Shown piece by piece: positions 4,763-63,261 of a stretch of 64,000 nt of DNA. The number at the start of each line of letters is the position of its first letter. Positions within the stretch are counted from its first letter, which is position 1. A program made the position numbers and the translations under genes. The DNA comes from Euprymna scolopes (taxonomy: Eukaryota). Under the pieces are notes generated by a model. The model ran no database searches, was not told the origin of the DNA, and was given only the letters and a program-made list of their open reading frames with translations. The stretch lies in assembly GCA_053919585.1 (NCBI GenBank), contig CM132825.1; one strand, 5' to 3'.

Positions 4763-4846
4763 TTAATATCTATGCAGCAACTACTTTTCATTCATCTTAG
4801 CAAATATATTCCCAGGACGGCTTACAATAGTGATATTTGGAGGTAT

Positions 4847-6150: not shown

Positions 6151-6161
6151 TTTGGTATTTT

Positions 6162-28050: not shown

Positions 28051-28261
28051 GGGAAGCAACCAATGATTAATCCAGTCGACTGTACAACTAAAATATTAGA
28101 TACAAGACAAAGGAAGGTAACAGCAAAGACAAAGAAGAACTACGAATGCAGAGATTTCAGTTCACAGAGAACAGTAGGAACCGTCCTTTTTTATTGGAAA
28201 ACAAAAACAGGAGATCGTCAGGCAAAAAAATAAAATGAATAAAATAAAGATAGATTGTTAG

Positions 28262-31200
28262 GATCAGGAGCTGGATGTCAGTGGGCACTGAAAGGCAGGT
28301 GTCAGCGATCTGCTAAGTTGGATGTCAGTGGGCACTGGAGGGAAGCTTCAGCAGGCTGCTGAGCAGAACATCAGTGGATACTGGAAGGGAATGTCAGCGG
28401 GCTGCTAAGCAGGAAATCAGTGGATATTGGAAGAAAGTATCAGTGGGCTGCTGAGCAGGACATCAGTGAATACTGGAAGGGAGTAACAGCGGGATGCTTA
28501 GTAGTGTGATGTAATCCCTCATTGGTGAGCTTTAGATCACGCAGAGCCCCGAGGAGGGCCGAATAGCTTTGCTAAGATAGGTTTTGATCATTCCCGGGTG
28601 ACGCCAGATAACCGAAGGATTTAAAATAGAGAATATAAGTATATATATTTTATTTCATGTCAAAATAGATATTGTTTGAAACCAGAGAAATATATATGCA
28701 GCTAAAGTTGATGACAGGAAACTTGAAGCTTAACATTGTCTGGCCTTGATGAACTCAAAGTCAGATGTCAGAACTGAGATCTGACCTTAGCGGGTCGTGT
28801 GAATTAGTATGTCTGTAGAATTCAGATCCCAGATTCGGGAATTGCACAAACGCAAAAACCTGAAGCTTTTCAATTTTGTGGCGAAATCTTATTGGCTGGG
28901 GAAACTTCCACCCCATCCACATAGCTCTATCCATATATATGACTGTTGCGCGAAAATTAGTCAGAAGGAAGATAGTTTCGAGAGATTGCTTGTTGATTTC
29001 GGGGAGAACAGATCATATAGATACATGACCCCTCTACTTCCTCATCAAGCCGTCTGACGCTGTCTGTGAAGAGATTCAGACTTTGAAAAACTTACTAAGA
29101 ACTGAATGATATTCATAAAATATTTGTACATATGTTTGTGAAATTAATTCTGTAGACTAGAGTTTCACGAGTTGGTTTTTCTTCTTGCCTGTGGCTTTGA
29201 TATTCGCTTTCAGCATACAGGATTCAATGTATCAACCCTCGGAGAAGAACTAGAGCATACGATCCCAGATTTCCAGAAAAACAGGGGTCCAAGCTACATC
29301 AGTAAGGGATTACAGTAGGACATCAGTGGATACTCGAAGAGAGTGTCAGTTGGCTGCAGAGCAAGACGTCAGTGGATACTGGAAAAGAGTGTCAGTTGGC
29401 TGCTGAGCAGGACACCAGTGAATTCTGGAAGAGTATTCAGTTGGCTGCTAGCAGGAAATAAGTGCATACTGGAAGGCAGTGTCAGTAAGCTGCTGAGAAG
29501 GACATCAGTGAATGCTGGAAGGGAGTGTCAATAAGCTGCTGGGCAAGACATCAGTGGATACTGTAAGAGAGTGTCTGTTGGAAGCTGTGCATGACATCAC
29601 TCGATACTGGAAGAGAGTGTAAGTGGGCTGCTTAGCAGAACATTAGTGGATACTGGAAGAGAGTGTCAGCTGGCTGCTGAGTAGGACATCAGTGCATACT
29701 GGAAGAAAGTGTAACTTGGCTGCTTAGTAGGACATCAGTGGATACTGGGTGAGAGTGTCAGTTGCCTGCTGAGCAAGACATCAGTGGATACCGGAGGAGA
29801 GTGTCAGTTGGCTGCTTAGTAGGACATCAGTGGATACTGGAAGAGAGTATCAGTGGGCTGCTGAGCAGGATATTAGTGGATACTGGAGGAGAGTGTCAGT
29901 TGGGTGGTACATAGGACATCAGTGGATACTGGAAGAGAGTCTCGGTGGTCTACTGAGCAGTACATCAGTGAATAGTGGAAAGGAATGTCATAGGGCTGAT
30001 GAGCAGAACATCAGTGGATACTGAAAGAGAGTGTTAGTGGGCTGATGAGCAGGACATTAGAGGATACCGGAAGGGAGTGTAAGTTGGTTGCTTAGTAAGA
30101 CATCAGTGAATACTGGAAGGGAGTGTCTGTTGGTTGCTTAGCAACACATCAACGGATACTGGAAGGGAGTGTGTAGGGCTGGTGAGAAAGACATCAGTTG
30201 ATACTGGAAGAAAGTTTCAGTTGGCTTCTGAGCAAGACATCGGTGGTTACTGGAAGGGAGTGTCAGTGGGTTGCTGACCTGGACATCAGTGGTTACGGGA
30301 AGGGAGTATCAGTCAGGTGCTAAGCAGGAAATAAGTGGATACTGGAAGAGGGTGTCAGTTGGCTGCTTAGCGGGACATTGATACTGGAAGAGAGTGTCCG
30401 TTGGCTGCTTAGTACGATATCAGTGGATACTGGAAGATAGTGTCAGTTGCTTGCTTAGTAGGATATCAGTGGATACTGGAAGAGACTGTAAGTTGGCTGC
30501 TGAGCAGGATATCAGTTGATAGTGGAAGAGTGAGTCAGTTGGCTACTTAGTAGGACATCAGTGGATACTGGAAGTGAGTGGCAGTTGGCTGCTTATGCAA
30601 TATCAGTGTGTACTGGGAGAGATTGTCAGTAGGGCATCAGTTGATAGTGAAAGAGTGTGTCAGTTGGCTGGTTAGTAGAACATCATTTGATACGGGAAGA
30701 CCATGTCTGTTGACTTCTTAGAAGGACATCAGTGGATACTGGAATAGAGTGGCAGTTGTCTGCTAAGCAGGACATCCGTGAATACTGGACGAGTGTGACA
30801 TTTGGCGGCTTAGTAAGAAATCAGTGGATACTAAAAAACGCTGTCACCTTGCTGCTGAATAAGACAGTGTATATACAGAAAGAGAGTGTTAGTGTGTTAC
30901 TGAGCAGGATATCAGTGCATACTAGAAGACAGTGTTAAGTGGCTTTTTTGTAGGATGTCAGTGGATAATAAAAGAGAGTGTAAGTTGGCTGCTGAGCAGG
31001 ACATCAGTGGATACTGGAAGTGAGTGTCAGTTGGCTGCTGAGCAGGACATCAGTGGATACTGCAAGACAGTGTCAGTTGGCTGCTGACAAGGACATCAGT
31101 GGATACTGGAAGAGATTGTAACTTGGCTGCTCAGTAGGACATCAGTGGATACTGGAATAAAGGTCCAGTGGCCTGCTGAGCAGGTCATCAGTGGATACTG

Positions 31201-34200
31201 GAAGAGAGAGTAAATTGGCTATTTAGTAGGACATCAGTTGATACTGGAAGAGAGAGTCAATTGGCTACTTAGTAGGACATCAGTTAGTACTGGAGGAGAG
31301 TGTCAGTTGGCTACTTAGTAGGACATCAGTTGATATTGGAAGAGAGAGTCAGTTGGCTGCTTAGTAGGACATCAGTTGATACTGGAAGAGAGTGTCAATT
31401 GGCTGCTTAGTAGGACATCAGTTGATACTGGAAGAGAGACTCAGTTGGCTGCTTAGTAGGACATCAGTTGATACTGGAAGAAAAAGTCAATTGGCTACTT
31501 AGTAGGACATCAGTTGGTACTGGAAGACAGTGTAATTTGGCTGCTTAGTAGGACATCAGTTGATACTGGAAGAGAGAGTAAATTAGCAGCTTAGTAAGAC
31601 ATCAGTTGATGCTGAAAGAGAGAGTCAATTGGCTGCTTAGTAGGACATCAGTTGATACTGGAAGAGAGTGTCAGTTGGCTCCTTAATAGGACATCAGTTG
31701 ATACTGAAAGAGAGTCAATTGGCTACTTAGTAGGACATCAGTTGATAAGGAAGAGAGTGTCAATTGGCTGCTTAGTAGGACATCAGTTGATACTGGAAGA
31801 GAGTGTCAGTTGGCTGCATAGTAGGACATCAGTTGATACTGGAAGAGAGTATCATTTGGCTGCTTAGTAGGACATCAGTTGATACTGGAAGAGAGAGTCA
31901 ATTGGCTACTTAGTAGGACATCAGTCTATACTAGAAGAGATTGTCAGTTGGCTGCTTAGTAGGAAATCAGTTGATACTGGAAGAGAGAGTCAATTGGCTA
32001 CTACGTAGGACATCAGTTGATACTGGAAGAGAGAGTCAATTGGCTGCTTAGAAGGACATCAGTTTATACTGTAAGAGAGAGTCAATTAGCAGCTTAGTAA
32101 GATATCAGTTGATACTGGAAGAGAGTGTCAGTTGGCTCCTTAATAGGACATCAGTTGATACTGAAAGAGAGAGTCAATTGGCTACTTAGTAGGACATCAG
32201 TTGATACTGGAAGAGAGTTTCAATTGGCTGCTTAGTAGGACATCAGTTGATACTGGAAGAGAGTGTCAGTTGGCTGCATAGTAGGACATCAGTTGATACT
32301 GGAAGAGAGTGTCAGTTGACTGCTTAGTAGGACATCAGTTGATACTGGAAGAGAGTGTAAATTGGCTACTTAGTAGGACATCAGTTCGTACTGGAAGAGA
32401 GAGTAAATTGGCTACTTAGTAGGACATCAGTTGGTACTGGAAGAGATTATCATTTGGCTGCTTAGTAGGACATCAGTTGATACTGGAAGAGAGTGTCAGT
32501 TGCTTGCTTAGTAGGATATCAGTGGATACTGGAAGAGACTGTAAGTTGGCTGCTGAGCAGGATATCAGTTGATAGTGGAAGAGTGAGTCAGTTGGCTACT
32601 TAGTAGGACATCAGTGGATACTGGAAGTGAGTGGCAGTTGGCTGCTTATGCAATATCAGTGTGTACTGGGAGAGATTGTCAGTAGGGCATCAGTTGATAG
32701 TGAAAGAGTGTGTCAGTTGGCTGGTTAGTAGAACATCATTTGATACGGGAAGACCATGTCTGTTGACTTCTTAGAAGGACATCAGTGGATACTGGAATAG
32801 AGTGGCAGTTGTCTGCTAAGCAGGACATCCGTGAATACTGGACGAGTGTGACATTTGGCGGCTTAGTAAGAAATCAGTGGATACTAAAAAAGGCTGTCAC
32901 CTTGCTGCTGAATAAGACAGTGTATATACAGAAAGAGAGTGTTAGTGTGTTACTGAGCAGGATATCAGTGCATACTAGAAGACAGTGTTAAGTGGCTTTT
33001 TTGTAGGATGTCAGTGGATAATAAAAGAGAGTGTAAGTTGGCTGCTGAGCAGGACATCAGTGGATACTGGAAGTGAGTGTCAGTTGGCTGCTGAGCAGGA
33101 CATCAGTGGATACTGCAAGACAGTGTCAGTTGGCTGCTGACAAGGACATCAGTGGATACTGGAAGAGATTGTAACTTGGCTGCTCAGTAGGACATCAGTG
33201 GATACTGGAATAAAGGTCCAGTGGCCTGCTGAGCAGGTCATCAGTGGATACTGGAAGAGAGAGTAAATTGGCTATTTAGTAGGACATCAGTTGATACTGG
33301 AAGAGAGAGTCAATTGGCTACTTAGTAGGACATCAGTTAGTACTGGAGGAGAGTGTCAGTTGGCTACTTAGTAGGACATCAGTTGATATTGGAAGAGAGT
33401 GTCAGTTGGCTGCTTAGTAGGACATCAGTTGATACTGGAAGAGAGTGTCAATTGGCTGCTTAGTAGGACATCAGTTGATACTGGAAGAGAGTGTCAGTTG
33501 GCTGCTTAGTAGGACATCAGTTGATACTGGAAGAAAAAGTCAATTGGCTACTTAGTAGGACATCAGTTGGTACTGAAAGAGAGTGTAATTTGGCTGCTTA
33601 GTAGGACATCAGTTGATACTGGAAGAGAGAGTCAATTAGCAGCTTAGTAAGACATCAGTTGATGCTGAAAGAGAGAGTCAATTGGCTGCTTAGTAGGACA
33701 TCAGTTGATACTGGAAGAGAGTGTCAGTTGGCTCCTTAATAGGACATCAGTTGATACTGAAAGAGAGTCAATTGGCTACTTAGTAGGACATCAGTTGATA
33801 CTGGAAGAGAGTGTCAATTGGCTGCTTAGTAGGACATCAGTTGATACTGGAAGAGAGTGTCAGTTGGCTGCATAGTAGGACATCAGTTGATACTGGAAGA
33901 GAGTGTCAGTTGACTGCTTAGTAGGAAATCAGTTGATACTGGAAGAGAGTGTGAATTGGCTACTTAGTAGGACATCAGTTCGTACTGGAAGAGAGTGTCA
34001 ATTGGCTACTTAGTAGGACATCAGTGTATACTGGAAGAGATTATCAATTGGCTGCTTAGTAGGACATCAGTTGATACTGGAAGAGAGTGTCAGTTGGCTG
34101 CTTAGTAGGACATCAGTTGATACTAGAAGAGAGTGTCAGTTGGCTGCTTAGTAGGACATCAGTTGATACTGGAAGAGAGTGTCAGTTGGCTGCTTAGTAG

Positions 34201-37200
34201 GACATCAGTTGATACTGGAAGAGAGAGTCAATTGGCTGCTTAGTAGGACATCAGTTGATACTGGAAGAGAGTTTCAGTTAGCTGCTTAGTAGGACATCAG
34301 TTGATACTGGAAGAGAGTGTCAGTTGGCTGCTTAGTAGGAAATCAGTTGATACTGGAAGAGAGTATCATTTGGCTGCTTAGTAGGACATCAGTTGATACT
34401 GTAAGAGAGAGTCAATTGGCTACTTAGTAGGACATCAGTATATACTAGAAGAGATTGTCAGTTGGCTGCTTAGTAGGAAATCTGTTGATACTGGAAGAGA
34501 GAGTCAATTGGCTACTTAGGAGGACATCAGTTGATACTGGAAGAGAGAGTCAATTGGCTACTACGTAGGACACCAGTTGATACTGGAAGAGAGAGTCAAT
34601 TGGCTGCTTAGAAGGACATCAGTTTATACTGTAAGAGAGAGTCAATTAGCAGCTTAGTAAGACATCAGTTGATACTGGAAGAGAGTGTCAGTTGGCTCCT
34701 TAATAGGACATCAGTTGATACTGAAAGAGAGAGTCAATTGGCTACTTAGTAGGATATCAGTTGATACTGGAAGAGAGTGTCAATTGGCTGCTTAGTAGGA
34801 CATCAGTTGATACTGGAAGAGAGTGTCAGTTGACTGCTTAGTAGGACATCAGTTGATACTGGAAGAGAGTGTCAATTGGCTACTTAGTAGGACATCAGTT
34901 CGTACTGGAAGAGAGAGTCAATTGGCTACTTAGTAGGACATCAGTTGGTACTGGAAGAGATTATCATTTGGCTGCTTAGTAGGACATCAGTTGATACTGG
35001 AAGAGAGTGTCAGTTGGCTGCTTAGTAGGACATCAGTTGATACTGGAAGAGAGTGTCAATTGGCTGCTTAGTAGGACATCAGTTGATACTGGAAGAGAGA
35101 GTCAATTGGCTGCTTAGTAGGACATCAGTTGATACTGGAAGAGAGTGTCAATTGGCTGCTTAGTAGGACATCAGTTGATACTGGAAGAGAGAGTCAATTG
35201 GCTGCTTAGTAGGACATCAGTTGATACTGGAAGAGAGTGTCAGTTGGCTGCTTAGTAGGACATCAGTTGATACTGGAAGAGAGTGTAAGTTGGCTGCTTA
35301 GTAGGACATCAGTTGATACTGGAAGAGAGTGTCAATTGGCTGCTTAGTAGGACATCAGTTGATACTGGAAGAGAGAGTCAATTGGCTGCTTAGTAGGACA
35401 TAAGTCTATACTAGAAGAGAGTGTCAGTTGGCTGCTTAGTAGGACATCAGTTGGTACTGGAAGAGAGTATCATTTGGCTGCTTAATAGGACATCAGTTGA
35501 TACTGGAAGAGAGAGTCAATTGGCTACTTAGTAGGACATCAGTTGATACTGGAAGAGAGTGTCAGTTGGCGGCTAAGTAGGACATCAGTTGATACTGGAC
35601 GAGAGTGTCAGTTGACTGCTTAGTAGGACATCAGTTGATACTGGAAGAGAGAGTCAGTTGGCTACTTAGTAGGACATCAGTTGATCTGGAAGAGAGTGTA
35701 AGTTGGCTGCTTAGTAGGACATCAGTTAATATTTGAAGAGAGTGTCAGTGTGCTGCTTAGTAGGACATCAGTTGATACTGGAAGAGAGAGTCAGTTTGCT
35801 GCTTAGTAGGACATCAGTTGATACTGGAAGAGAGTGTCAGTTGGCTGCTTAGTAGGACATCAGTTGATACTGGAAGAGAGAGTCAGTTGGCTGCTTAGTA
35901 GGACATCAGTTGGTACTGGAAGATAGTGTCAGTTGTCTACTTAGTAGGACATCAGTTGATACTGGAAGAGAGAGTCAATTGGCTACTTAGTAGGACATCC
36001 GTTGATACTGGGAGAGAGTGTCAGTTGGCTGCTTAGTAAGACATCAGTTGATACTGGAAGAGAGAGTCAATTGGCTACTTAGTACGACACCAGTTGGTAC
36101 TGGAAGAGAGCATCATTTGGCTGCTTAGTAGGACATCAGTTGATACTGGAAGAGATAGTCAATTGGCTACTAAGTAGGACATCAGTTGATACTGGAATAG
36201 AGTGTCCATTGGCTGCTTAGTAGGACATCAGTTGATACTGGAAGAGAGAGTCAATTGGCTGCTTAGTAGGACATCAGTTGATACTGGAAGAGAGTTTCAG
36301 TTAGCTGCTTAGTAGGACATCAGTTCATACTGGAAGAGAGTGTCAGTTGGCTGCTTAGTAGGAAATCAATTGATACTGGAAGAGAGTATCATTTGGCTGC
36401 TTAGTAGGACATCAGTTGATACTGGAAGAGAGAGTCAATTGGCTACTTAGTAGGACATCAGTCTATACTAGAAGAGATTGTCAGTTGGCTGCTTAGTAGG
36501 AAATCAGTTGATACTGGAAGAGAGAGTCAATTGGCTACTTAGGAGGACATCAGTTGATACTGGAAGAGAGAGTCAATTGGCTACTTAGTAGGACATCAGT
36601 TGATACTGGAAGAGAGAGTCAATTGGCTGCTTAGTAGGACATCAGTTGATACTGGAAGAGAGTGTCAGTTGGCTGCTTAGTAGAACATCAATTGATACTG
36701 GAAGAGAGTGTCAGTTGACTGCTTAGTAGGACATCAGTTGATACTGGAAGAGAGTGTCAATTGGCTATTAGTAGGACATCAGTTCGTACTGGAAGAGAGA
36801 GTCAATTGGCTACTTAGTAGGACATCAGTTGGTACTGGAAGAGATTATCATTTGGCTGCTTAGTAGGACATCAGTGTATACTGGAAGAGAGTGTCAGTTG
36901 GCTGCTTAGTAGGACATCAGTTGATACTGGAAGAGAGTGTCAATTGGCTGCTTAGTAGGACATCAGTTGATACTGGAAGAGAGAGTCAATTGGCTGCTTA
37001 GTAGGACATCAGTTGATACTGGAAGAGAGTGTCATTTGGCTGCTTAGTAGGACATCAGTTGATACTGGAAGAGAGAGTCAATTGGCTGCTTAATAGGACA
37101 TCAGTGTATACTGGAAGAGAGTGTCAGTTGGCTGCTTAGTAGGACATCAGTTGATACTGGAAGAGAGTGTAAGTTGGCTGCTTAGTAGGACATCAGTTGA

Positions 37201-40200
37201 TACTGGAAGAGAGTGTCAATTGGCTGCTTAGTAGGACATCAGTTGATACTGGAAGAGAGAGTCAATTGGCTGCTTAGTAGGACATAAGTCTATACTAGAA
37301 GAGAGTGTCAGTTGGCTGCTTAGTAGGAAATCAGTGTATACTGGAAGAGAGAGTCAATTGGCTACTTAGTAGGACATCAGTTGATACTGGAAGAGAGAGT
37401 AAATTGGCTACTACGTAGGACATCAGTTGATACTGGAAGAGAGAGTCAATTGGCTGCTTAGTAGGACATCAGTTGCTACTGTAAGAGAGTGTCAATTGGC
37501 TACTTAGTAGGACATCAGTTGGTACTGGAAGAGAGAGTCAATTGGCTACTTAGTAGGACATCAGTTGATACTGGAAGAGACTATCATTTGGCTGCTTAGT
37601 AGGACATCAGTTGATACTGGAAGAGAGTGTCAGTTGGCTGCTTAGTAGGACATCGGTTGATACTGGAAGAGAGTTTACATTGGCTGCTTAGTAGGACATC
37701 AGTTGATACTGGAAGAGAGAGTCAATTGGCTACTTAGTAGGACATCAGTTGGTACTGGAAGAGAGTATCATTTGGCTGCTTAATAGGACATCAGTTGATA
37801 CTGGAAGAGAGAGTAAATTGGCTACTTAGTAGGACATCAGTTGATACTGGAAGAGAGTGTCAGTTGGCGGCTAAGTAGGAAATCAGTTGATACTGGACGA
37901 GAGTGTCAGTTGACTGCTTAGTAGGACATCAGTTGATACTGGAAGAGAGAGTCAGTTGGCTACTTAGTAGGACATCAGTTGATCTGGAAGAGAGTGTCAG
38001 TTGGCTGCTTAGTAGGACATCAGTTAATATTTGAAGAGAGTGTCAGTGTGCTGCTTAGTAGGACATCAGTTGATACTGGAAGAGAGAGTCAGTTTGCTGC
38101 TTAGTAGGACATCAGTTGATACTGGAAGAGAGTGTCAGTTGGCTGCTTAGTAGGACATCAGTTGATACTGGAAGAGAGAGTCAGTTGGCTGCTTAGTAGG
38201 ACATCAGTTGGTACTGGAAGATAGTGTCAGTTGTCTACTTAGTAGGACATCAGTTGATACTGGAAGAGAGAGTCAATTGGCTACTTAGTAGGACATCCGT
38301 TGATACTGGGAGAGAGTGTCAGTTGGCTGTATAGTAAGACATCAGTTGATACTGGAAGAGAGAGTCAATTGGCTACTTAGTACGACACCAGTTGGTACTG
38401 GAAGAGAGCATCATTTGGCTGCTTAGTAGGACATCAGTTGATACTGGAAGAGATAGTCAATTGGCTACTAAGTAGGACATCAGTTAGTACTGGAAGAGAG
38501 TGTACATTGGCTACTTAGTAGGACATCAGTTGATACTCGAAGAGAGTGTCAGTTGGCTGCTTAGTAGGACATCAGTTGATACTGGAATAGAGTGTCCATT
38601 GGCTGCTTAGTAGGACATCAGTTGATACTGGAAGAGAGAGTCAATTGGCTGCTTAGTAGGACATCAGTTGATACTGGAAGAGAGTTTCAGTTAGCTGCTT
38701 AGTAGGACATCAGTTCATACTGGAAGAGAGTGTCAGTTGGCTGCTTAGTAGGAAATCAATTGATACTGGAAGAGAGTATAATTTGGCTGCTTAGTAGGAC
38801 ATCAGTTGATACTGGAAGAGAGAGTCAATTGGCTACTTAGTAGGACATCAGTCTATACTAGAAGAGATTGTCAGTTGGCTGCTTAGTAGGAAATCAGTTG
38901 ATACTGGAAGAGAGAGTCAATTGGCTACTTAGGAGGACATCAGTTGATACTGGAAGAGAGAGTCAATTGGCTACTACGTAGGACATCAGTTGATACTGGA
39001 AGAGAGAGTCAATTGGCTGCTTAGAAGGACATCAGTTTATACTGTAAGAGAGAGTCAATTAGCAGCTTAGTAAGACATCAGTTGATACTGGAAGAGAGTG
39101 TCAGTTGGCTCCTTAATAGGACATCAGTTGATACTGAAAGAGAGAGTAAATTGGCTACTTAGTAGGACATCAGTTGATACTGGAAGAGAGTGTCAATTGG
39201 CTGCTTAGTAGGACATCAGTTGATACTGGAAGAGAGTGTCAATTGGTTGCTTAGTAGGACATCAGTTGATACTGGAAGAGAGAGTCAATTGGCTGCTTAG
39301 TAGGACATAAGTCTATACTAGAAGAGAGTGTCAATTGGCTGCTTAGTAGGAAATCAGTGTATACTGGAAGAGAGAGTCAATTGGCTACTTAGTAGGACAT
39401 CAGTTGATACTGGAAGAGAGAGTAAATTGGCTACTACGTAGGACATCAGTTGATACTGGAAGAGAGAGTCAATTGGCTGCTTAGTAGGACATCAGTTGCT
39501 ACTGTAAGAGAGTGTAAATTGGCTACATAGTAGGACATCAGTTGGTACTGGAAGAGAGAGTCAATTGGCTACTTAGTAGGACATCAGTTGATACTGGAAG
39601 AGACTATCATTTGGCTGCTTAGTAGGACATCAGATGATACTGGAAGAGAGTGTCAGTTGGCTGCTTAGTAGGACATCGGTTGATACTGGAAGAGAGTTTA
39701 CATTGGCTGCTTAGTAGGACATCAGTTGATACTGGAAGAGAGAGTCAATTGGCTACTTAGTAGGACATCAGTTGGTACTGGAAGAGAGTATCATTTGGCT
39801 GCGTAATAGGACATCAGTTGATACTGGAAGAGAGAGTCAATTGGCTACTTAGTAGGACATCAGTTGATACTGGAAGAGAGTGTCAGTTGGCGGCTAAGTA
39901 GGACATCAGTTGATACTGGACGAGAGTGTCAGTTGACTGCTTAGTAGGACATCAGTTGATACTGGAAGAGAGAGTCAGTTGGCTACTTAGTAGGACATCA
40001 GTTGATCTGGAAGAGAGTGTCAGTTGGCCGCTTAGTAGGACATCAGTTAATATTTGAAGAGAGTGTCAGTGTGCTGCTTAGTAGGACATCAGTTGATACT
40101 GGAAGAGAGAGTCAGTTTGCTGCTTAGTAGGACATCAGTTGATACTGGAAGAGAGTGTCAGTTGGCTGCTTAGTAGGACATCAGTTGATACTGGAAGAGA

Positions 40201-52200: not shown

Positions 52201-55200
52201 CAGTTGGCTGCTTAGTAGGATATCAGTTTATACTGGAAGAGAGTGTCAATTCGCTGCTTCGTAGGACATCAGTTTATACTGGGAGAGAGAGTGAATTGGC
52301 TAATAATTAGGGCATCAGTTTTTACTGGAAGAGAGTGTCAATTTGCGGCTTAGTAGGACATCAGTTGATACTGGAAGAGAAAGTCAATTAGCTGCTAAGT
52401 AGGACATCAGTTGATACTGGAAGAGAGAATCAGTTGGCTGCTTAGTACGACATCAGTTCATACTGGAAGAGAGTGTCAGTTGGCTGCTTAGTAGGACATC
52501 AGTTCATACTGGAAGAGAGAGTCAATTGGCTACTTAGTAGGACATCAGTTGATAAGAGAGTGTCAGTTGGCTGCTTAGTAGGACATCAGTTCATACTGCA
52601 AGAGTGTGTCAGTTGGCTACTTAGTAGAACATCAGTTGATACTGGAAGAGAGAGTCAATTGGCTACTTAGTAGGACATAAGTTGATACTGGAAGAGAGTG
52701 TCAGTTGGCTGCTTAGTAGGACCAGTTGATACTGGAAAAGAGGGTCAGTTGGCTACTTAGTAGGACATCAGTTGACACTGGAAGAGAGAGTCAATTAGCT
52801 GCTTAGTAGGACATCAGTTTATACTGGATGAGAGAGTCAATTGGCTGCTTTGTAGGACGTCAGTTGATACTGGAAGAGAGAGTCAATTGGCTACTTAGTA
52901 GGGCATCAGTTGATACTGGAAGAGAGAGTCAATTGGCTGCTTAGTAGGACATCAGTGGATACTGGAAGAGAGTGTCAATTGGCTACTTAGTAGGACATCA
53001 GTTCGTACTGGAAGAGAGAGTCAATTGGCTACTTAGTAGGACATCAGTTGGTACTGGAAGAGATTATCATTTGGCTGCTTAGTAGGACATCAGTGTATAC
53101 TGGAAGAGAGTGTCAGTTGGCTGCTTAGTAGGACATCAGTTGATACTGGAAGAGAGTGTCAATTGGCTGCTTAGTAGGACATCAGTTGATACTGGAAGAG
53201 AGAGTCAATTGGCTGCTTAGTAGGACATCAGTTGATACTGGAAGAGAGTGTCATTTGGCTGCTTAGTAGGACATCAGTTGATACTGGAAGAGAGAGTCAA
53301 TTGGCTGCTTAATAGGACATCAGTGTATACTGGAAGAGAGTGTCAGTTGGCTGCTTAGTAGGACATCAGTTGATACTGGAAGAGAGTGTAAGTTGGCTGC
53401 TTAGTAGGACATCAGTTGATACTGGAAGAGAGTGTCAATTGGCTGCTTAGTAGGACATCAGTTGATACTGGAAGAGAGAGTCAATTGGCTGCTTAGTAGG
53501 ACATAAGTCTATACTAGAAGAGAGTGTCAGTTGGCTGCTTAGTAGGAAATCAGTGTATACTGGAAGAGAGAGCCAATTGGCTACTTAGTAGGACATCAGT
53601 TGATACTGGAAGAGAGAGTCAATTGGCTGCTTAGTAGGACATCCGTTGATACTGGAAGAGAGTGTCAGCTGGCTGCTTAGTAGGATATCAGTTTATACTG
53701 GAAGAGAGAGTCAATTCGCTGCTTAGTAGGACATCAGTTGATACTGGAAGAGAGTGTCAATTGGCTGCTTAGTAGGACATCAGTTGATACTGGAAGAGAG
53801 AGTCAATTGGCTGCTTAGTAGGACATCAGTTGATACTTGAAGAGAGAGTCAATTGGCTACTTAGTAGGGTATCAGTTGATAATGGAAGAGTGGGTCAATT
53901 GGCTGCTTAGTAGGACATCAGTTGATACTGGAAGAGAGTGTCAATTGGCTACTTAGTAGGACATCAGTTGGTACTGGAAGAGAGTGTCATTTGGCTGCTT
54001 AGTAGGATATTAGTTGATACTGGAAGAGAGTGTCAGTTTGCTGCTTAGTAGGACATCAGTTGATACTGGAAGAGAGTTGTCTTTTGCTGCTACGCAGGAT
54101 ATCAGTTGATACTGGAAGAATGTGTCAGTTGGCTACTTAGTAGGACATCAGTTCGTACTGGAAGAGAGTATCATTTGGCTGCGTAGTAGGACATCAGTTT
54201 ATACTGGAAGAGAGTGTCAGTTGGCTGCTTAGTAGGACATCGGTTTATACTGGAAGAGAGTGTACAGTGGCTGCTTAGTAGGACATCAGTTGATACTGAA
54301 AGAGAGAGTCAATTTGCTGCTTAGTAGGACATCAGTCGATACAGGAAGAGATTGTCAGTTTGCTGCTTAGTAGAATATCAGTTGATACTGGAAGAGAGTG
54401 TCAATTGTCTGCTTCGTAGGACATCAGTTGATACTGGAAGAGAGAGTCAATTGGCTGCTTAGCAAGACATCAGTTGATACTGGGAGAGAGAGTCAATTGG
54501 CTACTAATAAGGGCATCAGTTTGTACTGGAAGATAGTGTCATTTGGCTGCTTAATAGGACATCAGTTTATACTGGAAGAGAGAGTCCATGCGCTGCTTAG
54601 TAGGACATCAGTTGATACTGGAAGTGAGTGTCAGTTGGCTGCTTAGTAGGACATCAGTTGATACTGGAAGAGAGTTGCAGTTTGCTGCTACGCAGGATAT
54701 CAGTTGGTACTGGAAGAATGTGTCAGTTGGCTACTTAGTAGGGCATCAGTTCTTACTGGAAGAGAGTATCATTTGGCTGCTTAGTAGGACATCCGTTGAT
54801 ACTGGAAGAGAGTGTCAGTTGGCTGCTTAGTAGGATATCAGTTTATACTGGAAGAGAGTGTCAATTCGCTGCTTCGTAGGACATCAGTTGATACTGGAAG
54901 AGAGAGTAAATTGGCTGCTTAGTAGGACATCAGTTTATACTGGGAGAGAGAGTGAATTGGCTAATAATTAGGGCATCAGTTTTTACTGGAAGAGAGTGTC
55001 AATTTGCTGCTTAGTAGGACATCAGTTGATACTGGAAGAGAAACTAAATTAGCTGCTTAGTAGGACATCAGTTGATACTGGAAGAGAGAATCAGTTGGCT
55101 GCTTAGTACGACATCGGTTCATACTGGAAGAAAGTGTCAATTGGCTACTTAGTAGGACATCAGTTGATACTGGAAGAGAGTGTCAGTTCGCTGCTTAGTA

Positions 55201-58200
55201 GGACAGCAGTTCATACTGGAAGAGAGTGTCAATTGGCTACTAATTAGGGCATCAGTTTGTACTGGAAGAGAGTGTCAATTGGCTGCTTAGTAGGACATCA
55301 GTTGATACTGGAAGAGAAAGTCAATTAGCTGCTTAGTAGGACATCAGTTGAAACTGGAAGAGAGAGTCAATTGGCTGCTTAGTAGGACATCAATTGATAC
55401 TGGAACAGAGTGTCATTTGGCTTCTTAGTAGGACATCAGTTGATACTGGAAGAGAGAGTCAATTGGCTGCTTAGTAGGACATCAGTTGATACTGGAAGAG
55501 AGAGTCAATTGGCTATTAGTAGGGCATCAGTTGATACTGGAAGAGAGAGTCAATTGGCTGCTTAGTAGGACATCAGTTGATACTGGAAGAGAGTGTTAAT
55601 TGGCTACTTAGTAGGACATCAGTTGGTACTGGAAAAGAGTATCATTTGGCTGCTTAGTAAGACATCAGTTGATACTGGAAGAGAGTGTCAGTTGGCTGCT
55701 TAGTAGGACATCAGTTGATACTGGAAGAGAGTGTCAATTGGCTGCTTAGTAGGGCATCAGTTGATACTGGAAGAGAGAGTCAATTCGCTGCTTAGTAGGA
55801 CATCAGTTGATACTGGAAGAGAGAGTCAATTTGCTTCTTAGCAGGGCATCAGTTGATACTAGAAGAGAGAGTTAATTGGCTGCTTAGTAGGACATCAGTT
55901 GATACTGGAAGAGAGTGTCAATTGGCTACTTAGTAGGACATCAGTTGATACTGGAAGAGAGAGTCTATGGGCTACTTAGCAGGACATCAGTTGGTACTGG
56001 AAGAGAGTGTCAGTTGGCTACTTAGTAGGACATCAGTTGATACTGGAAGAGAGAGTTAATTAGCTACTTAGTAGGACATCAGTTGATACTGGGAGAGAGT
56101 GTCAATGGGCTACTAATTAGGGCATCAGTTTCTACTGGAAGAGAGTGTCATTTGGCTGCTTAGTAGGACATCAGTTGATACTGGAAGAGAGAGTCAATTA
56201 GCTGCTTAGTAGGACATCAGTTGATACTGGAAGAGAGTGTCAGTTGGCGGCTTAGTAGGACATCAGTTGATACTGGAAGAGAGAGTCAATTGGCTACTTA
56301 ATAGGACATCAGTTGATACTGGAAGAGAGTGTCAATTGGCTGCTTAGTAGGACATCAGTTGATACTTGAAGAGAGAGTCAATTGGCTACTTAGTAGGGTA
56401 TCAGTTGATAATGGAAGAGTGGGTCAATTGGCTGCTTAGTAGGACATCAGTTGATACTGGAAGAGAGTGTCAATTGGCTACTTAGTAGGACATCAGTTGG
56501 TACTGGAAGAGAGTGTCATTTGGCTGCTTAGTAGGATATTAGTTGATACTGGAAGAGAGTTGCAGTTTGCTGCTACGCAGGATATCAGTTGATACTGGAA
56601 GAATGTGTCAGTTGCCTACTTAGTAGGACATCAGTTCGTACTGGAAGAGAGTATCATGGGGCTGCTTAGTAGGACATCAGTTTATACTGGAAGAAAGTTT
56701 CAGTTGGTTGCTTAGTAGGACATCAGTTGATACTGGAAGAGAGTGTCAATTGGCTGCTTAGTAGGACATCAGTTGATACTGGAAGAGAGTGTCAATTGGC
56801 TACTTAGTAGGACATCAGTTGGTACTGGAAGAGAGTGTCATTTGGCTGCTTAGTAGGATATTAGTTGATACTGGAAGAGAGTGTCAGTTGGCTGCTTAGT
56901 AGGACATCAGTTGATACTGGAAGAGAGTTGCAGTTTGCTGCTACGCAGGATATCAGTTGATACTGGAAGAATGTGTCAGTTGCCTACTTAGTAGGACATC
57001 AGTTCGTACTGGAAGAGAGTATCATGGGGCTGCTTAGTAGGACATCAGTTTATACTGGAAGAAAGTTTCAGTTGGTTGCTTAGTAGGACATCGGTTGATA
57101 CTGGAAGAGAGTGTACATTGGCTGCTTAGTAGGACATCAGTTGATACTGAAAGAGAGAGTCAATTTGCTGCTTAGTAGGACATTAGTTGATACAGGAAGA
57201 GATTGTCAGTTGGCTGCTTAGTAGAATATCAGTTGATAATGGAAGAGAGTGTCAATTGTCTGCTTCGTAGGACATCAGTTGATACTGGAAGAGAGAGTCA
57301 ATTTGCTGCTTAGCAAGACATCAGTTGATACTGGGAGAGAGAGTCAATTGGCTACTAATTAGGGCATCAGTTTGTACTGGAAGAGAGTGTCATTTGGCTG
57401 CTTAATAGGACATCAGTTTATACTGGAAGAGAGAGTCCATGCGCTGCTTAGTAGGACATCAGTTGATACTGGAAGAGAGAGTCAATTGGCTGCTTAGTAG
57501 GACATCAGTTGATACTGGAAGAGAGAGTCAATTGGCTACTTAGTAGGACATCAGTTGATACTGGAAGAGAGTGTCAGTTTGCTGCTTAGTAGGACATAAG
57601 TTCATACTGGAAGAGAGTGTCAGTTGGCTGCTTAGTAGGACATCAGTTGACACTGGAAGAGACAGTCAATTGGCTGCTTAGTAGGACATCAGTTGATACT
57701 GGAAGAGAGTGTCAGTTTGCTGCTTAGAAGGACATCAGTTGATACTGCAAGACAGAGTCAATTGGCTACTTAGTAGGATATCAGTTGATACTTGAAGAGA
57801 GTGTCAATTGGCTGCTTAGCCGGACATCAGTTGATACTGGAAGAGAGAGTCAATTTGCTGCTTAGTAGGACATCAGTTAATACTGGAAGAGAGAGTCAAT
57901 TGGCTACTTAGTAGGGCATCAGTTAATACTGGAATAGAGTGTCAATTGGCTGCTGAGTAGGACATCAGTTGATACTGGCAGAGAGTGTCAATTGGCTACT
58001 TAGTAGGACATCAGTTGGTACTGTAAGAGAGTATCATTTGGCTGCTTAGTAGGACATCAGTTGATACTGGAAGAGAGTGTCAGTTGGCTGCTTAGTAGGA
58101 CATCAGTTGATACTGGAAGAGTGAGTCAATTGGCAGCTTAGTAGGGCATCAGTTTATACGGGAAGAGAGAGTTAATTGGCTACTTAGAAGGGCATCAGTT

Positions 58201-61200
58201 GATACTGGAAGAGATTGTCAGTTGGCTACTTAGTAGGACATCAGTGGATAATGGAAGAGAGTGTTGTGTGCTACTTAACATGACATCATTGGATACTGGA
58301 AGAGTGTGTCAGTTTACTACTTAGTAGGACATAAGTAGTTACTGGAAGAGAATTTCAGTGGGGTGCTGAACAGGACATCACTGTATACTGGAAGAGAGTT
58401 TCAGTTGGCTGCTGAGCAGGATATCAGTGGATACTGGAAGAGTCTCAGTGGGCTGCTGAACAGGATATAAGTGGATACTGGGACAATGTCAATTGGCTGC
58501 CAAGTAGGACATCAGTTGATACTGGAAGAGAGGGTCAATTGGCTACTTAGTAGGACATCAGTTGCTACTGGAAGAGAGTATCATTTGGCTGCTTAGTAGG
58601 ACATCAGTTGATACTGGAAGAGAGTGTCAGTTGGCTGCTTAGTAGGACATCAGTTGATACTGGAAGAGAGTGTCAATTGGCAGCTTAGTAGGGCATCAGT
58701 TGATACTGGAAGAGAGAGTCAATTGGCTGCTTAGTAGGACATCAGTTGATACTGGAAGAGAGTGTCAATTGGCTACTTAGTAGGACATCAGTTGATACTG
58801 GAAGAGAGTGTCAGTTGGCTGCTTAGTAGGACATCAGTTGATACTGGAAGAGAGTGTCAATTGGCAGCTTAGTAGGGCATCAGTTGATACTGGAAGAGAG
58901 AGTTAATTGGCTACTTAGCAGGGCATCAGTTGATACAAGAAGAGAATGTCAATTGGCTACTTAGTAGGACATCAGTGGATAATGGAAGAGAGTGTTGTGT
59001 GCTACTTAACAGGACATCATTGTATATTGGAAGAGTGTGTCAGTTTACTACTTAGTAGGACATAAGTAGTTACTGGAAGAGAATCTCAGTGGGCTGCTGA
59101 ACAGGACATCAGTGTATACTGGAAGAGAGTGTCAGTTGGCTGCTGAGCAGGATATCAGTGGATACTGGAAGAGAGTCTCAGTGGGCTGCTGAACAGGATA
59201 TAATTGGATACTGGGACAATGTCAATTGGCTGCCAAGTAGGACATCAGTGGATGCTGGAAGAGTGTGTCAATGGGCTGCATAGCAGGACATCAGTAGATA
59301 CTGGAGGAGATTGTCAGTTGGCTGCTAAGTAGGACATCAGTTGATACTGGAATAAAGTTTCAGTGAGAAGTGAAGCCAGACATCAGTGGATATTTGGAGA
59401 CAGTGTCAGTTGACTGCTGAGCAGGACATTAGTGGATATTGGAAGAGAGTGTCCGTTGACAGTTTAGTATGACATCAGTGTATAATGGAAAAGAGTTTCA
59501 ATGCGCTGCTGAGCAGCACATCAGTTGGTACTGTAAGAGACAGTTATTTGGCTGCTTAGTAGGACATGAGTGGATACTGGAAGAGAGTGTCATTTGGCTG
59601 CTTAGTAAGTCATGAGTGGATGCTGGAAGAGAGTGTCGTGTGCTGCTGAGCAGGACATCAGTGGATACTGGAAGAGAGTGTCAGTGGGCTGCTTAGCAGG
59701 ACATCGGTTGATACTGGAAGAGATTGTCAGTTGGCTGCTGAATAGGACATCAATGGATACTGGAAGAGAGTGTCAGTTGGCTACTTAGTAAGTCATGAGT
59801 GGATGCTGGAAGAGAGTGTCGTGTGCTGCTGAGCAGGACATCAGTGGATACTGGAAGAGAGTGTCAGTGGGCTGCTTAGCAGGACATCGGTTGATACTGG
59901 AAGAGTGAGTCAGTTGGCTGCTTAGTAGGACATCAGTGGATACTGGAAGAGCGTGTCTGTTGGCTGCTTAGTAGGACATCAGTGGATACTGGAAGAGTGT
60001 TGCAGTTGGCGGCTTAGTAAGAAATCAGTGGATACTGGAAGAGGCTGTCAGTTTGCTGCTGATTAAGACATGAGTGTATACTGGACGAGAGTGTCAGTTG
60101 GCTACTGAGCAAGATATCAGTGTATACTGGAAGAGAGTGTCAGTTGGCTGCTTATTACGGCATCACTGGATACTGGAAGAGAGTGTCAGTTGTCTTCTAT
60201 GCAGGACATCAGTTGATACTGGAAGAGAGTCCCAGTGGGCTGCTGAACAGGATAAAAGTAGATACTGGAAGAGATTGTCAGTTGGTTGCTGAGTAGGACA
60301 TCCGTTGATACTGGAATAAAGTTTCAGGGGGCAGTGGAGCAGGAAATCAGTGGATATTTGGAGAGAGTGTCGATTGACTGCTGAGCAGGACATCAGTGGA
60401 TACTGCAAGAGGTTGTCTATGGGCTGCTGAGCACGATTTTTGTGGATACTGAAAGAGAGTTTCAGTGGGTTGCTGAGTAGGACATTAGTCGATACTGGGA
60501 GAGAGTGTCAGTTAGCTGCTAAGCTTGACATCAGTTGGTACTGGAAGAGAGTGTCACATTACCGCTGAGCAGGACATCAATGGATACTGGAAGAGAGTGT
60601 CAGTTGGCTACTTAGTAGGACATCAGTTTATACTGGAAGAGAATTTCAGTTGGCTGTGTAGCAGGACATCATGTGATATTGGAATAGAGTGGCAGTTGGC
60701 TGTGAGCAGGACATTAGTGAATACTGGAAGAGTGTGTCAGTTTGCTGCTAACTAAGACGTGAGTGGATACTGGAAGAGAGTCTCAGTGGGCTGCTGAAGT
60801 GGATACTGGGAGAAAATGTCAGTTCGCTGCTCAGCAGGACATCAGTGGATATTGGAAGAGAGTGTCAGTTGGCAGCTTAGTATGACATCAGTGTATAATG
60901 GAAGAGAGTCTCAATTCGCTGCTGAGCAGGACATCAGTGGCTACTGGAAGAGATTGTCAATTGCCTGCTTAGTAGGACCTCAGTGGATACTGCAAGAGAG
61001 TGTATAGGAGCTGCTGAGCAGGACATCTGTGGATACTGGAAGAGCGTGTCAGTGGTTGCTGAGTAGGACATCAGATGATACTCGAAGAGAGTGTCAGTTA
61101 GCTGCTAAGCTGGACATCAGTGGATACTGGAAGAGAGTGTAAGTTGGCTGCTGAGCAGGACATCAGTTGATACTGGAAGAGAATGTCAGTTGGCTGCAGA

Positions 61201-62358
61201 GCAGGACATCAGTGAATACTGTAAGAGACTGTTATTTGGCTGCTTAGTAGGACATCATTGGAGACTGGAAGATAGTGTAAGTTGGCTGCTGCATAGGACA
61301 TTAGTGGATACTGGAAGAGAGTGTCAGTTTCAGTGGGCAGTGGAGCAGGACATCAGTGGATATTCGGAGAGAGTGTCAGTTTACTGCTGAGCAAGATATC
61401 AGTGGATATTGGAAGAGAGTGTCAGTTTGCAGCTTAGTATGACATCAGTGTATAATGGAAGAGAGTCTTAATGCGCTGCTGAGCAGGACATCAGTGGCTA
61501 CTGGAAGAGATTGTCAATTGCCTGCTTAGTAGGACATCAATGGATACTGCAAGAGAGTGTATATGGGCTGCTGAGCAGGTTATCTGTGGATACTCGAAGA
61601 GAGTGTCAGTTAGCTGCTAAGCTGGACATCAGTGGATACTAGAAGAGAGTGTCAGTTGGCTGCTTAGTAGGACATCAGTGGATACCGGACGAGAGTGTCA
61701 GATTACTGCTGAGCAGGACTTTAGTGGATACTAGAAGTGAGTGTCATTGGTCTGCTGCACAGTACATCAGTGGACACTTGAACAGAGTGTCAGTTGGCTA
61801 CTTAGTAGGACATCAGTTTATACTGGTAGAGAGTGTCAGTTGGCTGCTGAGCAGGACATCAGTGGATACTGGAAGAGACTGTTATTTGGCTGCTTAGTAG
61901 GACATCATTGGAGACTGGAAGAAGGGTCAGTTTGCTGCTTAATAGGACATCAGTGGATACTGGAAGAGAGTTTCAGTTGGCTGCGGAGTAGGACATCAGT
62001 GGATGCTGGAAGAGAGTTGCAGTTGGCTGCTGTGCAGGATATCTGTTGATACTGGAAGAGTGTATCAGTTGGCTGCTTAGTAGGACATCAGTTGATACGG
62101 GAAGAGGCTGTCGGTTTGCTGCTGAATAAGATATCAGTGGATACTGGAACAAAGTTTCAGTGGGCTGCGCAGCAGGACATCACTGGATATTGGGAGAGAG
62201 TGTCATTTCTCTCCTTAGAAGGATATAAGTGGATACTGGAAGAGAGTGTCAGTTTGCTACTTAGTAGGACATCATTGGATACTGGAAGAGGGTGTCAGTT
62301 GGATTCTGAATAGGACATCAGTAGATACTGGAAGAGAGTGTCGTGGGCTGCTGAGTAG
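28262..62358. repeat. 46-bp tandem satellite, ~720 units
   Basis: Consensus GGACATCAGTTGATACTGGAAGAGAGTGTCAGTTGGCTGCTTAGTA (period 46, e.g. 35221 to 35267). Divergent edges, homogeneous core, kb-scale internal duplications. Confidence 0.99.
28505..29314 (-). mobile_element. Solo LTR (810 bp) nested in the 46-bp satellite
   Basis: TG...CA ends, perfect 10-bp inverted repeat TGTAATCCCT (28510) / AGGGATTACA (29305-29314), 4-bp TSD GTAG at 28501-28504 and 29315-29318. Minus-strand AATAAA near 28650 suggests the orientation. Confidence 0.85.
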
Positions 62359-62899
62359 ACACAATAAACAAACACAATTAAAATAGCAAAATATTAGCTA
62401 ATTATCAATTTGCCCTTTGTCTTCAATTACGTCCGCAACACCACTATAAAAACAGTAGCTGTCGCGACAAAAAGTTAGCCACCCAGAGTCACAGCACATC
62501 CACAGCCTCGGATAATCATCGGCTCCCGTCGGATTTCCCCTCCCCTGATGTTAAACCCACTTCCACGCACATCATCCCTCAATTTCTCCACGTGGAAACA
62601 CCAACAGCAAGAACTAACATTTTCACTTCTTATTTCATCACAATTTCATATTAGCGCTCTACTTTTTTCTCCTAAGAACCACAAACATTAACCTTACGAT
62701 GAAACTCTTCTTTCCTGAACATTCTCACATCCTTACGAACTTTGAACACTTTGTTAATTTTACTTTCTCATTAAGTTTAATTTTATAAATAAACGATTGA
62801 AAAATCAATCATTTAAAATTTAAATACATATTGTTTGTCTGGTTCCTTCTCGCCACCATACGCTTATTCATAATATAACACATAGAATGCTAAACAGAA

Positions 62900-63170
62900 G
62901 TAAAACCCGATTGCTCCCAGCAGAAAAGCACTATTCACAAATCGATAAAAGAAACCCTTGCTATTATCGTCATAGTTACAATATCTACAAGGACAATTTA
63001 TTCATACTACAGGCCGACCATAAAACTCTATTGACCATCTTTGGGTTAAAAAAAATGTCTACCCGTCTATGATTAGACTGCTGAGGCAGTGCATAGTCTG
63101 TTGAAGTACAATTTCCAGTTAGAGTACCTATCCTTCAAACAGATCGAACATGTGGAATGAACTTCCAAGG
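62900..63170 (+). pseudogene. Ty3/gypsy RNase H remnant (continuation of the pol at 27250-28050)
   Basis: LLPAEKHYSQIDK(ETLAII), FILQADHKTLLTIFG, LKYNFQLEY correspond to the gypsy RNase H motifs E.NYSQIEKEAL and TDHKPL. Confidence 0.85.
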
Positions 63171-63261
63171 TAAATTCTGAGAATGAAATGTGAAGTGCAA
63201 AAAGCAGATTTATTAGTGCTAACAAAACAGAAAAATTACAGGACAGTTTTTCTGTGTTATA

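What the first reader, a model, noticed from the sequence alone, without database searches (positions are those of the whole stretch)
28256..62880. A ~34-kb satellite apparently born inside the U3 region of a single LTR
Seen: the 46-bp array begins about 6 bp after a TGTTA. It ends in ~520 bp of unique sequence with TATA box (62445), poly(A) signal (62788) and terminal TAACA (62880), the normal U3-R-U5 order, with 5-bp inverted TG..CA ends. The oldest-looking, most divergent units are at both edges. Established: LTR U3 regions often carry short tandem enhancer repeats, and TEs can seed satellites. Inference: an LTR with a few 46-bp units was inflated to ~34.6 kb in place, a snapshot of satellite birth with the parent element still around it.
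Basis: partly seen in the sequence, partly recalled or inferred. Interest (0 to 1): 0.8.

Follow-up and report, generated by a model that had tools for sequence, protein, structure and literature searches.

The report
Private satellite grown from LTR repeats
A 34-kb run of about 725 copies of a 46-base unit, found at only this place in a 5.9-Gb mollusc genome, grew from the few such units that an old retrotransposon LTR family carries; its right end is a broken copy of a different LTR, so this is a clear but ordinary case of a satellite arising from a transposon.

Summary
The array is real. There are about 5 units at 28272-28504 and 720 units at 29315-62358.

62359-62880 is the 3' 520 bp of a ~950-bp LTR family (LTR-B: TGTTATATT...AATATAACA, 4-bp TSDs). 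All 19 other copies examined carry a different 430-bp 5' part and no 46-bp units. The left TGTTA (28256-28260) is a private C>T change of an internal TGTCA.

The true left boundary is 28042. It is the start of an older, unrelated LTR family (LTR-A: 1.13-1.27 kb, TGTTGCAG...CGCGACA, 4-bp TSDs). LTR-A copies carry 2-6 units of 46-47 bp about 240 bp from their 5' end.

Both LTRs sit about 50 bp apart in a dead retroelement pol gene. The array joins LTR-B at a TA-GACA microhomology that occurs once in the genome.

The derived unit variant occurs only here: 539 of 539 forward hits genome-wide. The ancestral variant is dispersed, with about 790 hits.

Verdict: this is an in-place expansion of an LTR's own tandem repeat, followed or accompanied by a local deletion. 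The core idea holds but the anatomy does not. It is a known kind of event, and this scan already noted other single-locus satellites in the same genome.

The parts
27057..28041 (+). Left remnant of an old, dead retroelement pol gene (C-terminal part of reverse transcriptase and the start of the connection/RNase H region). It is the host of both LTR insertions.
   Evidence: It is 70-77% identical to at least 806 candidate copies. A better-preserved copy (L044:1443-1919) matches Pfam RVT_1 at E 3.3e-14, above the cut-off. The window pieces alone reach no Pfam threshold.
28042..28271 (+). 5' end of LTR-A (starts TGTTGCAG): the non-repeated first ~230 bp of an old 1.13-1.27-kb LTR family.
   Evidence: There is a sharp 5' homology boundary in 19 copies at 75-83% identity. 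The family ends in CGCGACA and has 4-bp TSDs (cttg/cttg, gact/gact). The other copies read TGTCA where the window has TGTTA.
28272..28504 (+). First ~5 units of 46 bp. They are the most like LTR-A's native units and run on from the LTR-A 5' part in the family's register.
   Evidence: TRF. Mean edit distance to native units of nine other LTR-A copies is 8.7-10.2 of 46, against 11.4-13.0 for the rest of the array. L036 aligns through to 28478.
28505..29314 (+). Inserted ~810-bp non-autonomous TIR element (TGTAATCCCT...AGGGATTACA) that splits one array unit. It has a 4-5-bp duplication (A)GTAG.
   Evidence: 18-nt inverted termini. At least 2832 candidate copies at 82-89% identity with the same ends. 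The array unit resumes in register on the other side.
29315..62358 (+). Main 46-bp array of 720 units. The edges are diverged (29.3-31.1 kb and 58.7-62.4 kb). The core is homogenised and carries irregular multi-kb block duplications.
   Evidence: A 4.5-kb block at 44057-48575 repeats at lag 4639 with 98.2% identity. Blocks of 1.0-1.5 kb repeat at lags 2023, 2053 and 2298. There are 539 hits of the core 31-mer in the window and 539 forward hits in the whole genome.
62356..62361 (+). Junction between the array and LTR-B at a TA-GACA microhomology. The array expects TAGGACA, LTR-B has TAAGACA, and the window reads TAGACA.
   Evidence: Alignment with six LTR-B copies. A 33-mer across the junction occurs once in the 5.9-Gb assembly.
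62359..62880 (+). 3' 520 bp of LTR-B with TATAAAAA at 62445, AATAAA at 62788 and the terminus AATATAACA. The family's first ~430 bp are missing.
   Evidence: It is 85-94% identical to at least 40 scored copies of at least 632 candidates. All matches end at 62880. Full copies are ~950 bp, run TGTTATATT...AATATAACA and have 4-bp TSDs.
62881..63493 (+). Right remnant of the same old pol gene (RNase H-type region, reading ...AEKHYSQIDK...DHKTLLTIFG). It resumes about 50 bp downstream of the point where the left remnant stops. A ~190-bp foldback insert interrupts it.
   Evidence: The alignment with seven other pol copies shows about 50 bp missing between 28041 and 62881. Foldback arms lie at 63259-63274/63436-63451 and 63289-63320/63386-63417.

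Best explanation
An old retroelement pol gene received two independent LTR insertions in the same orientation, about 50 bp apart. LTR-A came first: it is an old family that carries 2-6 tandem units of 46-47 bp about 240 bp from its 5' end, probably in U3. LTR-B belongs to a younger, unrelated family.

In this one copy of LTR-A the native short array expanded to about 725 units (33.3 kb). Growth was by repeated out-of-register exchange or replication slippage. The core stayed homogenised and evolved a private unit variant (CAGTTGATACTGG), while the edges kept old, diverged units of the ancestral type (CAGTGG).

A deletion or template switch at a TA-GACA microhomology joined the right edge of the array to the middle of LTR-B. 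It removed the remaining ~0.9 kb of LTR-A, about 50 bp of pol and the first ~430 bp of LTR-B. A TIR transposon later landed in the fifth unit.

Shown: the two families, their boundaries, the short native arrays elsewhere, the privacy of the derived variant, the unique junction and the missing pol stretch. Inferred: the order of events, the exchange mechanism, and that the units lie in U3.
For: - LTR-B identity and structure.
- LTR-A identity, termini, TSDs and length. Two LTR-A copies in direct orientation 6.1 kb apart on C28, and internal sequence shared downstream of 4 of 10 copies, fit a full-length element.
- Native short arrays of 2.1-6.4 units in other LTR-A copies. The ancestral-type unit has 401 forward and 390 reverse hits dispersed over the chromosomes, 1-6 per locus.
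- The derived unit has 539 hits in the window and 539 forward hits genome-wide. The single extra, reverse hit lies in an LTR-A copy.
- The leftmost units are the closest to native units.
- No other LTR-A or LTR-B 5' sequence is present in the window.
- The pol flanks are neighbouring parts of one pol copy with about 50 bp missing, and 28041 onward is not pol.
- The junction shows microhomology and is unique.
- Edge/core divergence and irregular block duplications.
Against: - No read evidence bridges the array/LTR-B junction or measures array length. Only short contigs were available.
- Two independent LTR insertions 50 bp apart is a coincidence that has to be accepted.
- The order of expansion and deletion cannot be resolved.
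- Only 19 copies of each LTR family, of hundreds, were inspected, so a rare chimeric subfamily could have been missed.
- The DNA similarity search skips very common words, so older diverged arrays of related units elsewhere are not fully excluded.
Confidence: 0.75

Rival explanations
1. One reading: one LTR, bounded by TGTTA at 28256 and TAACA at 62880, had its own U3 repeat inflated. Both flanks would then belong to the same element.
For: TGTTA and TAACA are present at those places. The right part carries a TATA box and a poly(A) signal in LTR order. LTR-B really does end in TAACA and begins with TGTTA in full copies.
Against: - All 19 other LTR-B copies have a different 430-bp 5' part beginning TGTTATATTCGC, and none has 46-bp units.
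- 28042-28277 belongs to another family whose homology runs across the TGTTA, and that family reads TGTCA there.
- About 50 bp of the host pol is missing between the two outer boundaries, and the flanking 4-mers differ (ATAT against CATA), so there is no TSD.
Confidence: 0.03
2. Reverse direction: a pre-existing satellite was ancestral, and the LTR-A family captured a few of its units and spread them.
For: This alternative is formally raised for Ogre-derived satellites (PMC7004042). Sequence similarity alone does not give direction.
Against: - LTR-A copies are old (70-83% identical to each other) and dispersed, with about 790 ancestral-type units on both strands equally.
- The long array's core variant is private to one locus.
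- The array is joined in register to an LTR-A 5' end that has a clean insertion boundary in pol.
- The units next to LTR-A are the most family-like.
Confidence: 0.05
3. Assembly artefact: the array length, or its join to one of the flanks, was produced by mis-assembly of a repeat.
For: No long-read check was possible. Short contigs of four public runs do not bridge 62358/62359. Near-identical 4.5-kb blocks are hard to assemble.
Against: - The sequences outside the two boundaries are adjacent parts (about 50 bp apart) of one and the same degraded pol copy, in the same orientation. A false join would not produce that.
- Diverged edge units at 62134-62340 are present in independent runs.
- In run X1, words of core-like units have a summed depth hundreds of times that of the single-copy flank. 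This is only a rough indicator.
- There are no N in the window.
Confidence: 0.08
4. A chimeric LTR formed elsewhere by recombination or template switching between LTR-A and LTR-B elements, then inserted here as one unit before expanding.
For: Both are 4-bp-TSD LTR families in the same orientation. Chimeric LTRs are known in general (own knowledge).
Against: - The junction 33-mer is unique in the genome.
- No locus among the 80 scored hits has both families together.
- About 50 bp of target is missing and there is no matching TSD.
Confidence: 0.04

Closest known systems
Satellites derived from short tandem arrays inside Ty3/gypsy Ogre LTR-retrotransposons of Lathyrus sativus (Vondrak et al. 2019/2020, PMC7004042)
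   Same: In both cases a dispersed LTR-retrotransposon family carries short arrays, a few copies expand into long satellite-type arrays, the expanded arrays are homogenised, and other TEs then insert into them.
   Different: In Lathyrus the repeats lie in the internal 3' untranslated region and expansions cluster in primary constrictions at several loci. Here the repeats lie inside the LTR itself, the host is a mollusc, and only one locus has expanded.
Expansion of tandemly repeated regulatory motifs or LTR segments of TEs by unequal exchange (third mechanism of McGurk and Barbash, as reviewed in PMC12628747)
   Same: The substrate is a TE-borne tandem repeat and growth is by unequal exchange. 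The review states that satellites can arise from a segment of an LTR and from short internal arrays of TEs.
   Different: That model was drawn mainly from Drosophila population data. Here the evidence is a single assembled locus with a preserved parent end, and unequal exchange is inferred from block duplications rather than observed.
Short satellite-like arrays carried by Helentron/Helitron non-autonomous elements in bivalve molluscs (PMC7492417, PMC8268682)
   Same: Both concern mollusc genomes in which TE-borne short arrays and satellite monomers share sequence. I saw only the abstracts.
   Different: The carrier there is a rolling-circle DNA transposon and the arrays are mostly short and scattered. 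Here the carrier is an LTR and one array reached 34 kb.

Membership tests
LTR of an LTR retrotransposon (LTR-B, right flank) | Dispersed copies of defined length with TG...CA termini and short terminal inverted repeats | tested here: met
   Copies are ~950 bp and run TGTTATATT...AATATAACA in 15 or more copies.
LTR of an LTR retrotransposon (LTR-B, right flank) | Target-site duplications of fixed length flanking solo copies | tested here: met
   Perfect 4-bp TSDs in L006, L007, L008, L011, L012, L019 and L020, and 3 of 4 matches in several others.
LTR of an LTR retrotransposon (LTR-B, right flank) | The window copy is complete, with both termini | tested here: not met
   Only family positions ~430-950 are present. 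The 5' 430 bp are found nowhere in the window.
LTR of an LTR retrotransposon (LTR-A, left flank) | TG...CA termini, defined length, TSDs | tested here: met
   TGTTGCAG...CGCGACA, 1126-1274 bp. TSDs are cttg/cttg and gact/gact, with two more at 3 of 4 and one not matching.
LTR of an LTR retrotransposon (LTR-A, left flank) | Occurs as direct pairs flanking an internal coding region | tested here: inconclusive
   One direct pair lies 6.1 kb apart on C28, and 4 of 10 copies share sequence beyond the LTR end.
LTR of an LTR retrotransposon (LTR-A, left flank) | The 46-bp units lie in U3, upstream of the promoter and poly(A) signal | not tested
   The position (about 240-400 of ~1200 bp) and an AATAAA about 55 bp from the 3' end of family copies suggest U3. 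No transcript ends were mapped.
TE-derived satellite DNA (expansion of a TE-internal short array) | The same monomer is present as short arrays in dispersed copies of the TE | tested here: met
   2.1-6.4 units in LTR-A copies. About 790 dispersed ancestral-type units.
TE-derived satellite DNA (expansion of a TE-internal short array) | A long head-to-tail array joined to TE sequence in the TE's own register | tested here: met
   About 725 units follow LTR-A's 5' 230 bp directly.
Classical satellite DNA | High abundance at many loci or chromosomes | tested here: not met
   The core variant is confined to this one locus. BLAST found only short TE-borne arrays elsewhere, with the caveat that the search skips very common words.

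The most novel reading that the evidence does not exclude
The locus may be more than a by-product. About 725 copies of an LTR U3 repeat now sit directly upstream of LTR-B's intact TATA box, R-like region and poly(A) signal. The composite could therefore act as a giant repeat-driven promoter or a non-coding or small-RNA source. Together with the other single-locus 17-50-kb satellites this scan noted in the same genome, it may also point to an unusually active, genome-wide process in this mollusc that inflates arbitrary short repeats into private satellites.
Probability: 0.1. Interest if true: 0.55.

Novelty: new member of a known kind. Interest (0 to 1): 0.3.

Why it matters
The locus is a cleanly readable example, in a mollusc, of a satellite starting from a transposon's own tandem repeat. 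The parent LTR end is still attached. The family elsewhere shows the unexpanded state of 2-6 units. The expanded variant is private to one locus, so direction and place of origin can be argued from sequence alone.

It also shows how two unrelated LTR fragments on either side of an array can imitate one inflated LTR. That is a useful caution for annotation. The mechanism class is already well documented, so the gain is an added case, not a new principle.

Tried and rejected
- BLAST-type search of the own genome with 920 bp of array did not return even the window itself, because common words are skipped. I replaced it with pattern searches.
- The idea that LTR-A is a non-LTR element on the minus strand, prompted by a T24 run before L026, was dropped. 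The other copies show TG...CA ends and 4-bp TSDs.
- The idea that 28041 onward is diverged pol, which would make the pol continuous, was rejected. Local alignment scores equal those of shuffles, and pol copies gave no hit to 28041-28300.
- Pfam on stop-free pieces of the window's pol remnant gave nothing. Only a better-preserved copy gave RVT_1.
- Read laying returned only short contigs (kept pieces of 52-451 nt). None bridges 62358/62359, so there is no verdict on the junction or on array length.
- A megablast self-comparison of the array returned no rows. I replaced it with a lag scan.
- No regular higher-order repeat was found, only irregular block duplications.
- No more loci could be fetched, so LTR-A's internal region and the C28 pair were not read.
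Full report
**The array**

TRF reports a 46-bp array at 29314-62358 (720.1 copies, 85% matches) and a short one at 28278-28498. Cutting the main array into units gives 720 units, 668 of them exactly 46 bp. There are no N in the window.

The two parts are separated by 28505-29314. This stretch has 18-nt inverted termini and matches at least 2832 candidate copies elsewhere at 82-89% identity with the same ends. The array unit is interrupted at ...CTTAGTAG and resumes at (A)GTAGGACATC. It is therefore a transposon insertion into an existing unit, with a 4-5-bp duplication.

Units at both edges differ 13-20% from the array consensus and core units differ 4-9%. Neighbour identity is 0.73-0.78 at the edges and 0.83-0.89 in the core.

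**The right flank**

The window belongs to a 5.9-Gb assembly, as C43:34658001-34722000. Earlier notes of this scan call it a mollusc genome.

62359-62880 matches at least 40 scored copies, of at least 632 candidates, at 85-94% identity. All matches end at 62880. Comparing 19 fetched copies with each other shows a ~950-bp element whose homology extends about 430 bp further upstream than in the window. It begins TGTTATATTCGC and ends AATATAACA. Seven copies have perfect 4-bp target-site duplications and several more are near-perfect.

This is a genuine LTR family, here called LTR-B, present mostly as solo LTRs. However, none of the 19 copies has a 46-bp unit or the window's left-flank sequence within 1.5 kb. 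LTR-B's own 5' 430 bp are nowhere in the window.

**The left flank**

27950-28280 matches 40 scored copies at 75-83% identity. Nearly all begin at query position 92-93, which is 28041/28042, and they run across the TGTTA into the first units. In those copies the ~240-bp leader is followed by only 2-3 units and then by other sequence. TRF counts 2.1-6.4 units of 46-47 bp per copy.

The family, here called LTR-A, has the following features:
- It starts sharply with TGTTGCAG and ends with CGCGACA.
- It is 1126-1274 bp long.
- Its 4-bp duplications are cttg/cttg and gact/gact, with two more at 3 of 4.
- Four of ten copies share sequence beyond the 3' end.
- Two copies lie in direct orientation 6.1 kb apart on C28.

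I read it as an older LTR family unrelated to LTR-B. BLAST finds no similarity between the two. Nothing of LTR-A downstream of its units is present anywhere in the window.

**The surroundings**

Left of 28042 and right of 62880 lie two pieces of one degraded retroelement pol gene. A better-preserved copy of the left piece matches Pfam RVT_1 at E 3.3e-14. The right piece reads AEKHYSQIDK...DHKTLLTIFG. From my own knowledge I recognise this as the RNase H-type region of Ty3/gypsy-like or BEL-like pol genes, but it reaches no Pfam threshold.

Aligned with seven other copies, the two pieces are in the same orientation and almost adjacent. About 50 bp of pol are missing between them. The start of LTR-A is not diverged pol (no hit of 28041-28300 in pol copies). 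The flanking 4-mers (ATAT and CATA) do not match.

So the 34.8 kb between 28042 and 62880 is not one insertion. Two LTRs landed about 50 bp apart, and everything between LTR-A's units and the middle of LTR-B has been lost. The near-adjacency of the two pol pieces also argues strongly that the assembly joins the right flanks across the array.

**The junction**

The last unit ends ...GGGCTGCTGAG and would continue TAGGACATCAG. LTR-B copies read ...CATTAAGACACAATAAAC. The window reads TAGACACAATAAAC. The break therefore lies in a TA-GACA microhomology, as expected for a microhomology-mediated deletion or a replication template switch. A 33-mer across the junction occurs once in the whole assembly, so it is a local accident and not a family feature.

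**Where the satellite occurs**

A 31-mer of the core unit, allowing up to 3 mismatches, hits 539 times in the window. It has 539 forward hits and 1 reverse hit in the whole genome, and the reverse hit lies in an LTR-A copy on C10. The derived variant (CAGTTGATACTGG) is therefore private to this locus.

A pattern for the ancestral-type unit (GCTGGACRTCAGWGGGYACTGGAAG, up to 2 mismatches) hits 401 times forward and 390 times reverse. The hits are scattered over the chromosomes, 1-6 per locus. That is the distribution expected for TE-borne units.

Within the array, the five leftmost units are the closest to native units of nine other LTR-A copies (8.7-10.2 differences of 46, against 11.4-13.0 elsewhere). 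Both edges keep the ancestral CAGTGG state.

**How it grew**

There is no regular higher-order repeat. Instead there are irregular block duplications:
- a 4.5-kb block at 44057-48575 repeated at lag 4639, 98.2% identical overall and 99.3% over its best 3 kb;
- blocks of 1.0-1.5 kb at lags 2023, 2053 and 2298, 96-97% identical.

A homogenised core, old edges and out-of-register block duplications form the classical signature of unequal exchange or slippage. This is inference, not observation.

**Read evidence**

Only short contigs of public runs were available, and none of the listed pieces bridges 62358/62359. The test is therefore inconclusive for the junction and for array length.

Diverged right-edge units (62134-62340) are present in other runs. 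One of these runs is labelled as a different organism and shows 6 differences in 182 bp. This hints that the edge is not very young.

In run X1, words of core-like units reach summed depths of 4400-8800, against about 17.5 for the single-copy flank. That is compatible with hundreds of units, but the tool warns that such depths are not copy numbers.

**Comparison with what is known**

Satellites that arise by occasional expansion of short tandem arrays carried by LTR retrotransposons are documented for Ogre elements in Lathyrus (PMC7004042). A recent review lists LTR segments, short internal arrays of TEs and tandemly repeated regulatory motifs as sources, with unequal exchange as the mechanism (PMC12628747). 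In bivalves, Helentron-borne arrays play a similar role (PMC7492417, abstract only).

The present locus is a further case. It differs in that the repeats lie inside the LTR, only one locus has expanded, and the parent LTR's 5' end is still attached.

This scan has already noted other single-locus satellites in the same genome that grew from TE or gene fragments (s1-247308, s1-268937). The phenomenon is thus recurrent here, and the scan found the same kind before on other DNA.

**Verdict**

The idea of in-place inflation of an LTR's repeat holds. The idea of a single LTR enclosing it does not. This is a new member of a known kind, of moderate to low interest.

Noticed in passing
window:82-3047 and 4244-4549: There is a second, unrelated satellite with a 108-109-bp unit: 27.5 copies at 92% match, plus a decayed 2.8-copy patch. 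The window lies in a repeat-rich stretch.
   Followed up: no
window:63259-63451: A ~190-bp foldback (palindromic) element with nested inverted arms (16 nt at 94% and 32 nt at 91% complementary) is inserted in the right pol remnant. It fills the gap in pol homology between polR positions 383 and 567.
   Followed up: partly
window:28505-29314: The TIR element inserted in the array belongs to a very abundant family (at least 2832 candidates). Many copies begin only at query position 93, which suggests a shorter subfamily or a composite 5' end.
   Followed up: partly
window:12399-13287 and 23577-23876: These are further complex tandem repeats: units of 16, 73 and 89 bp rich in ACAT/CAC, and units of 28, 56 and 84 bp.
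   Followed up: no
L007:724-985, L016:791-1204, L011:1155-1429: Some LTR-B copies carry internal duplications of their own 5' (U3-like) part of roughly 100-250 bp. This second LTR family therefore also has a length-variable 5' region.
   Followed up: no
LTR-A copies, e.g. L026:2130-2240 and L033:2110-2230: LTR-A carries a duplicated ~55-bp module. It contains a 16-nt palindrome, AGCCCTGAAAAGGGCT, flanked by AAAAACTTTC on the left and GTTTG on the right.
   Followed up: no
window:62149-62330: A run labelled as a different organism (B) holds a 182-nt contig of the diverged right-edge units with only 6 differences. The array edge may be shared with a close relative.
   Followed up: no
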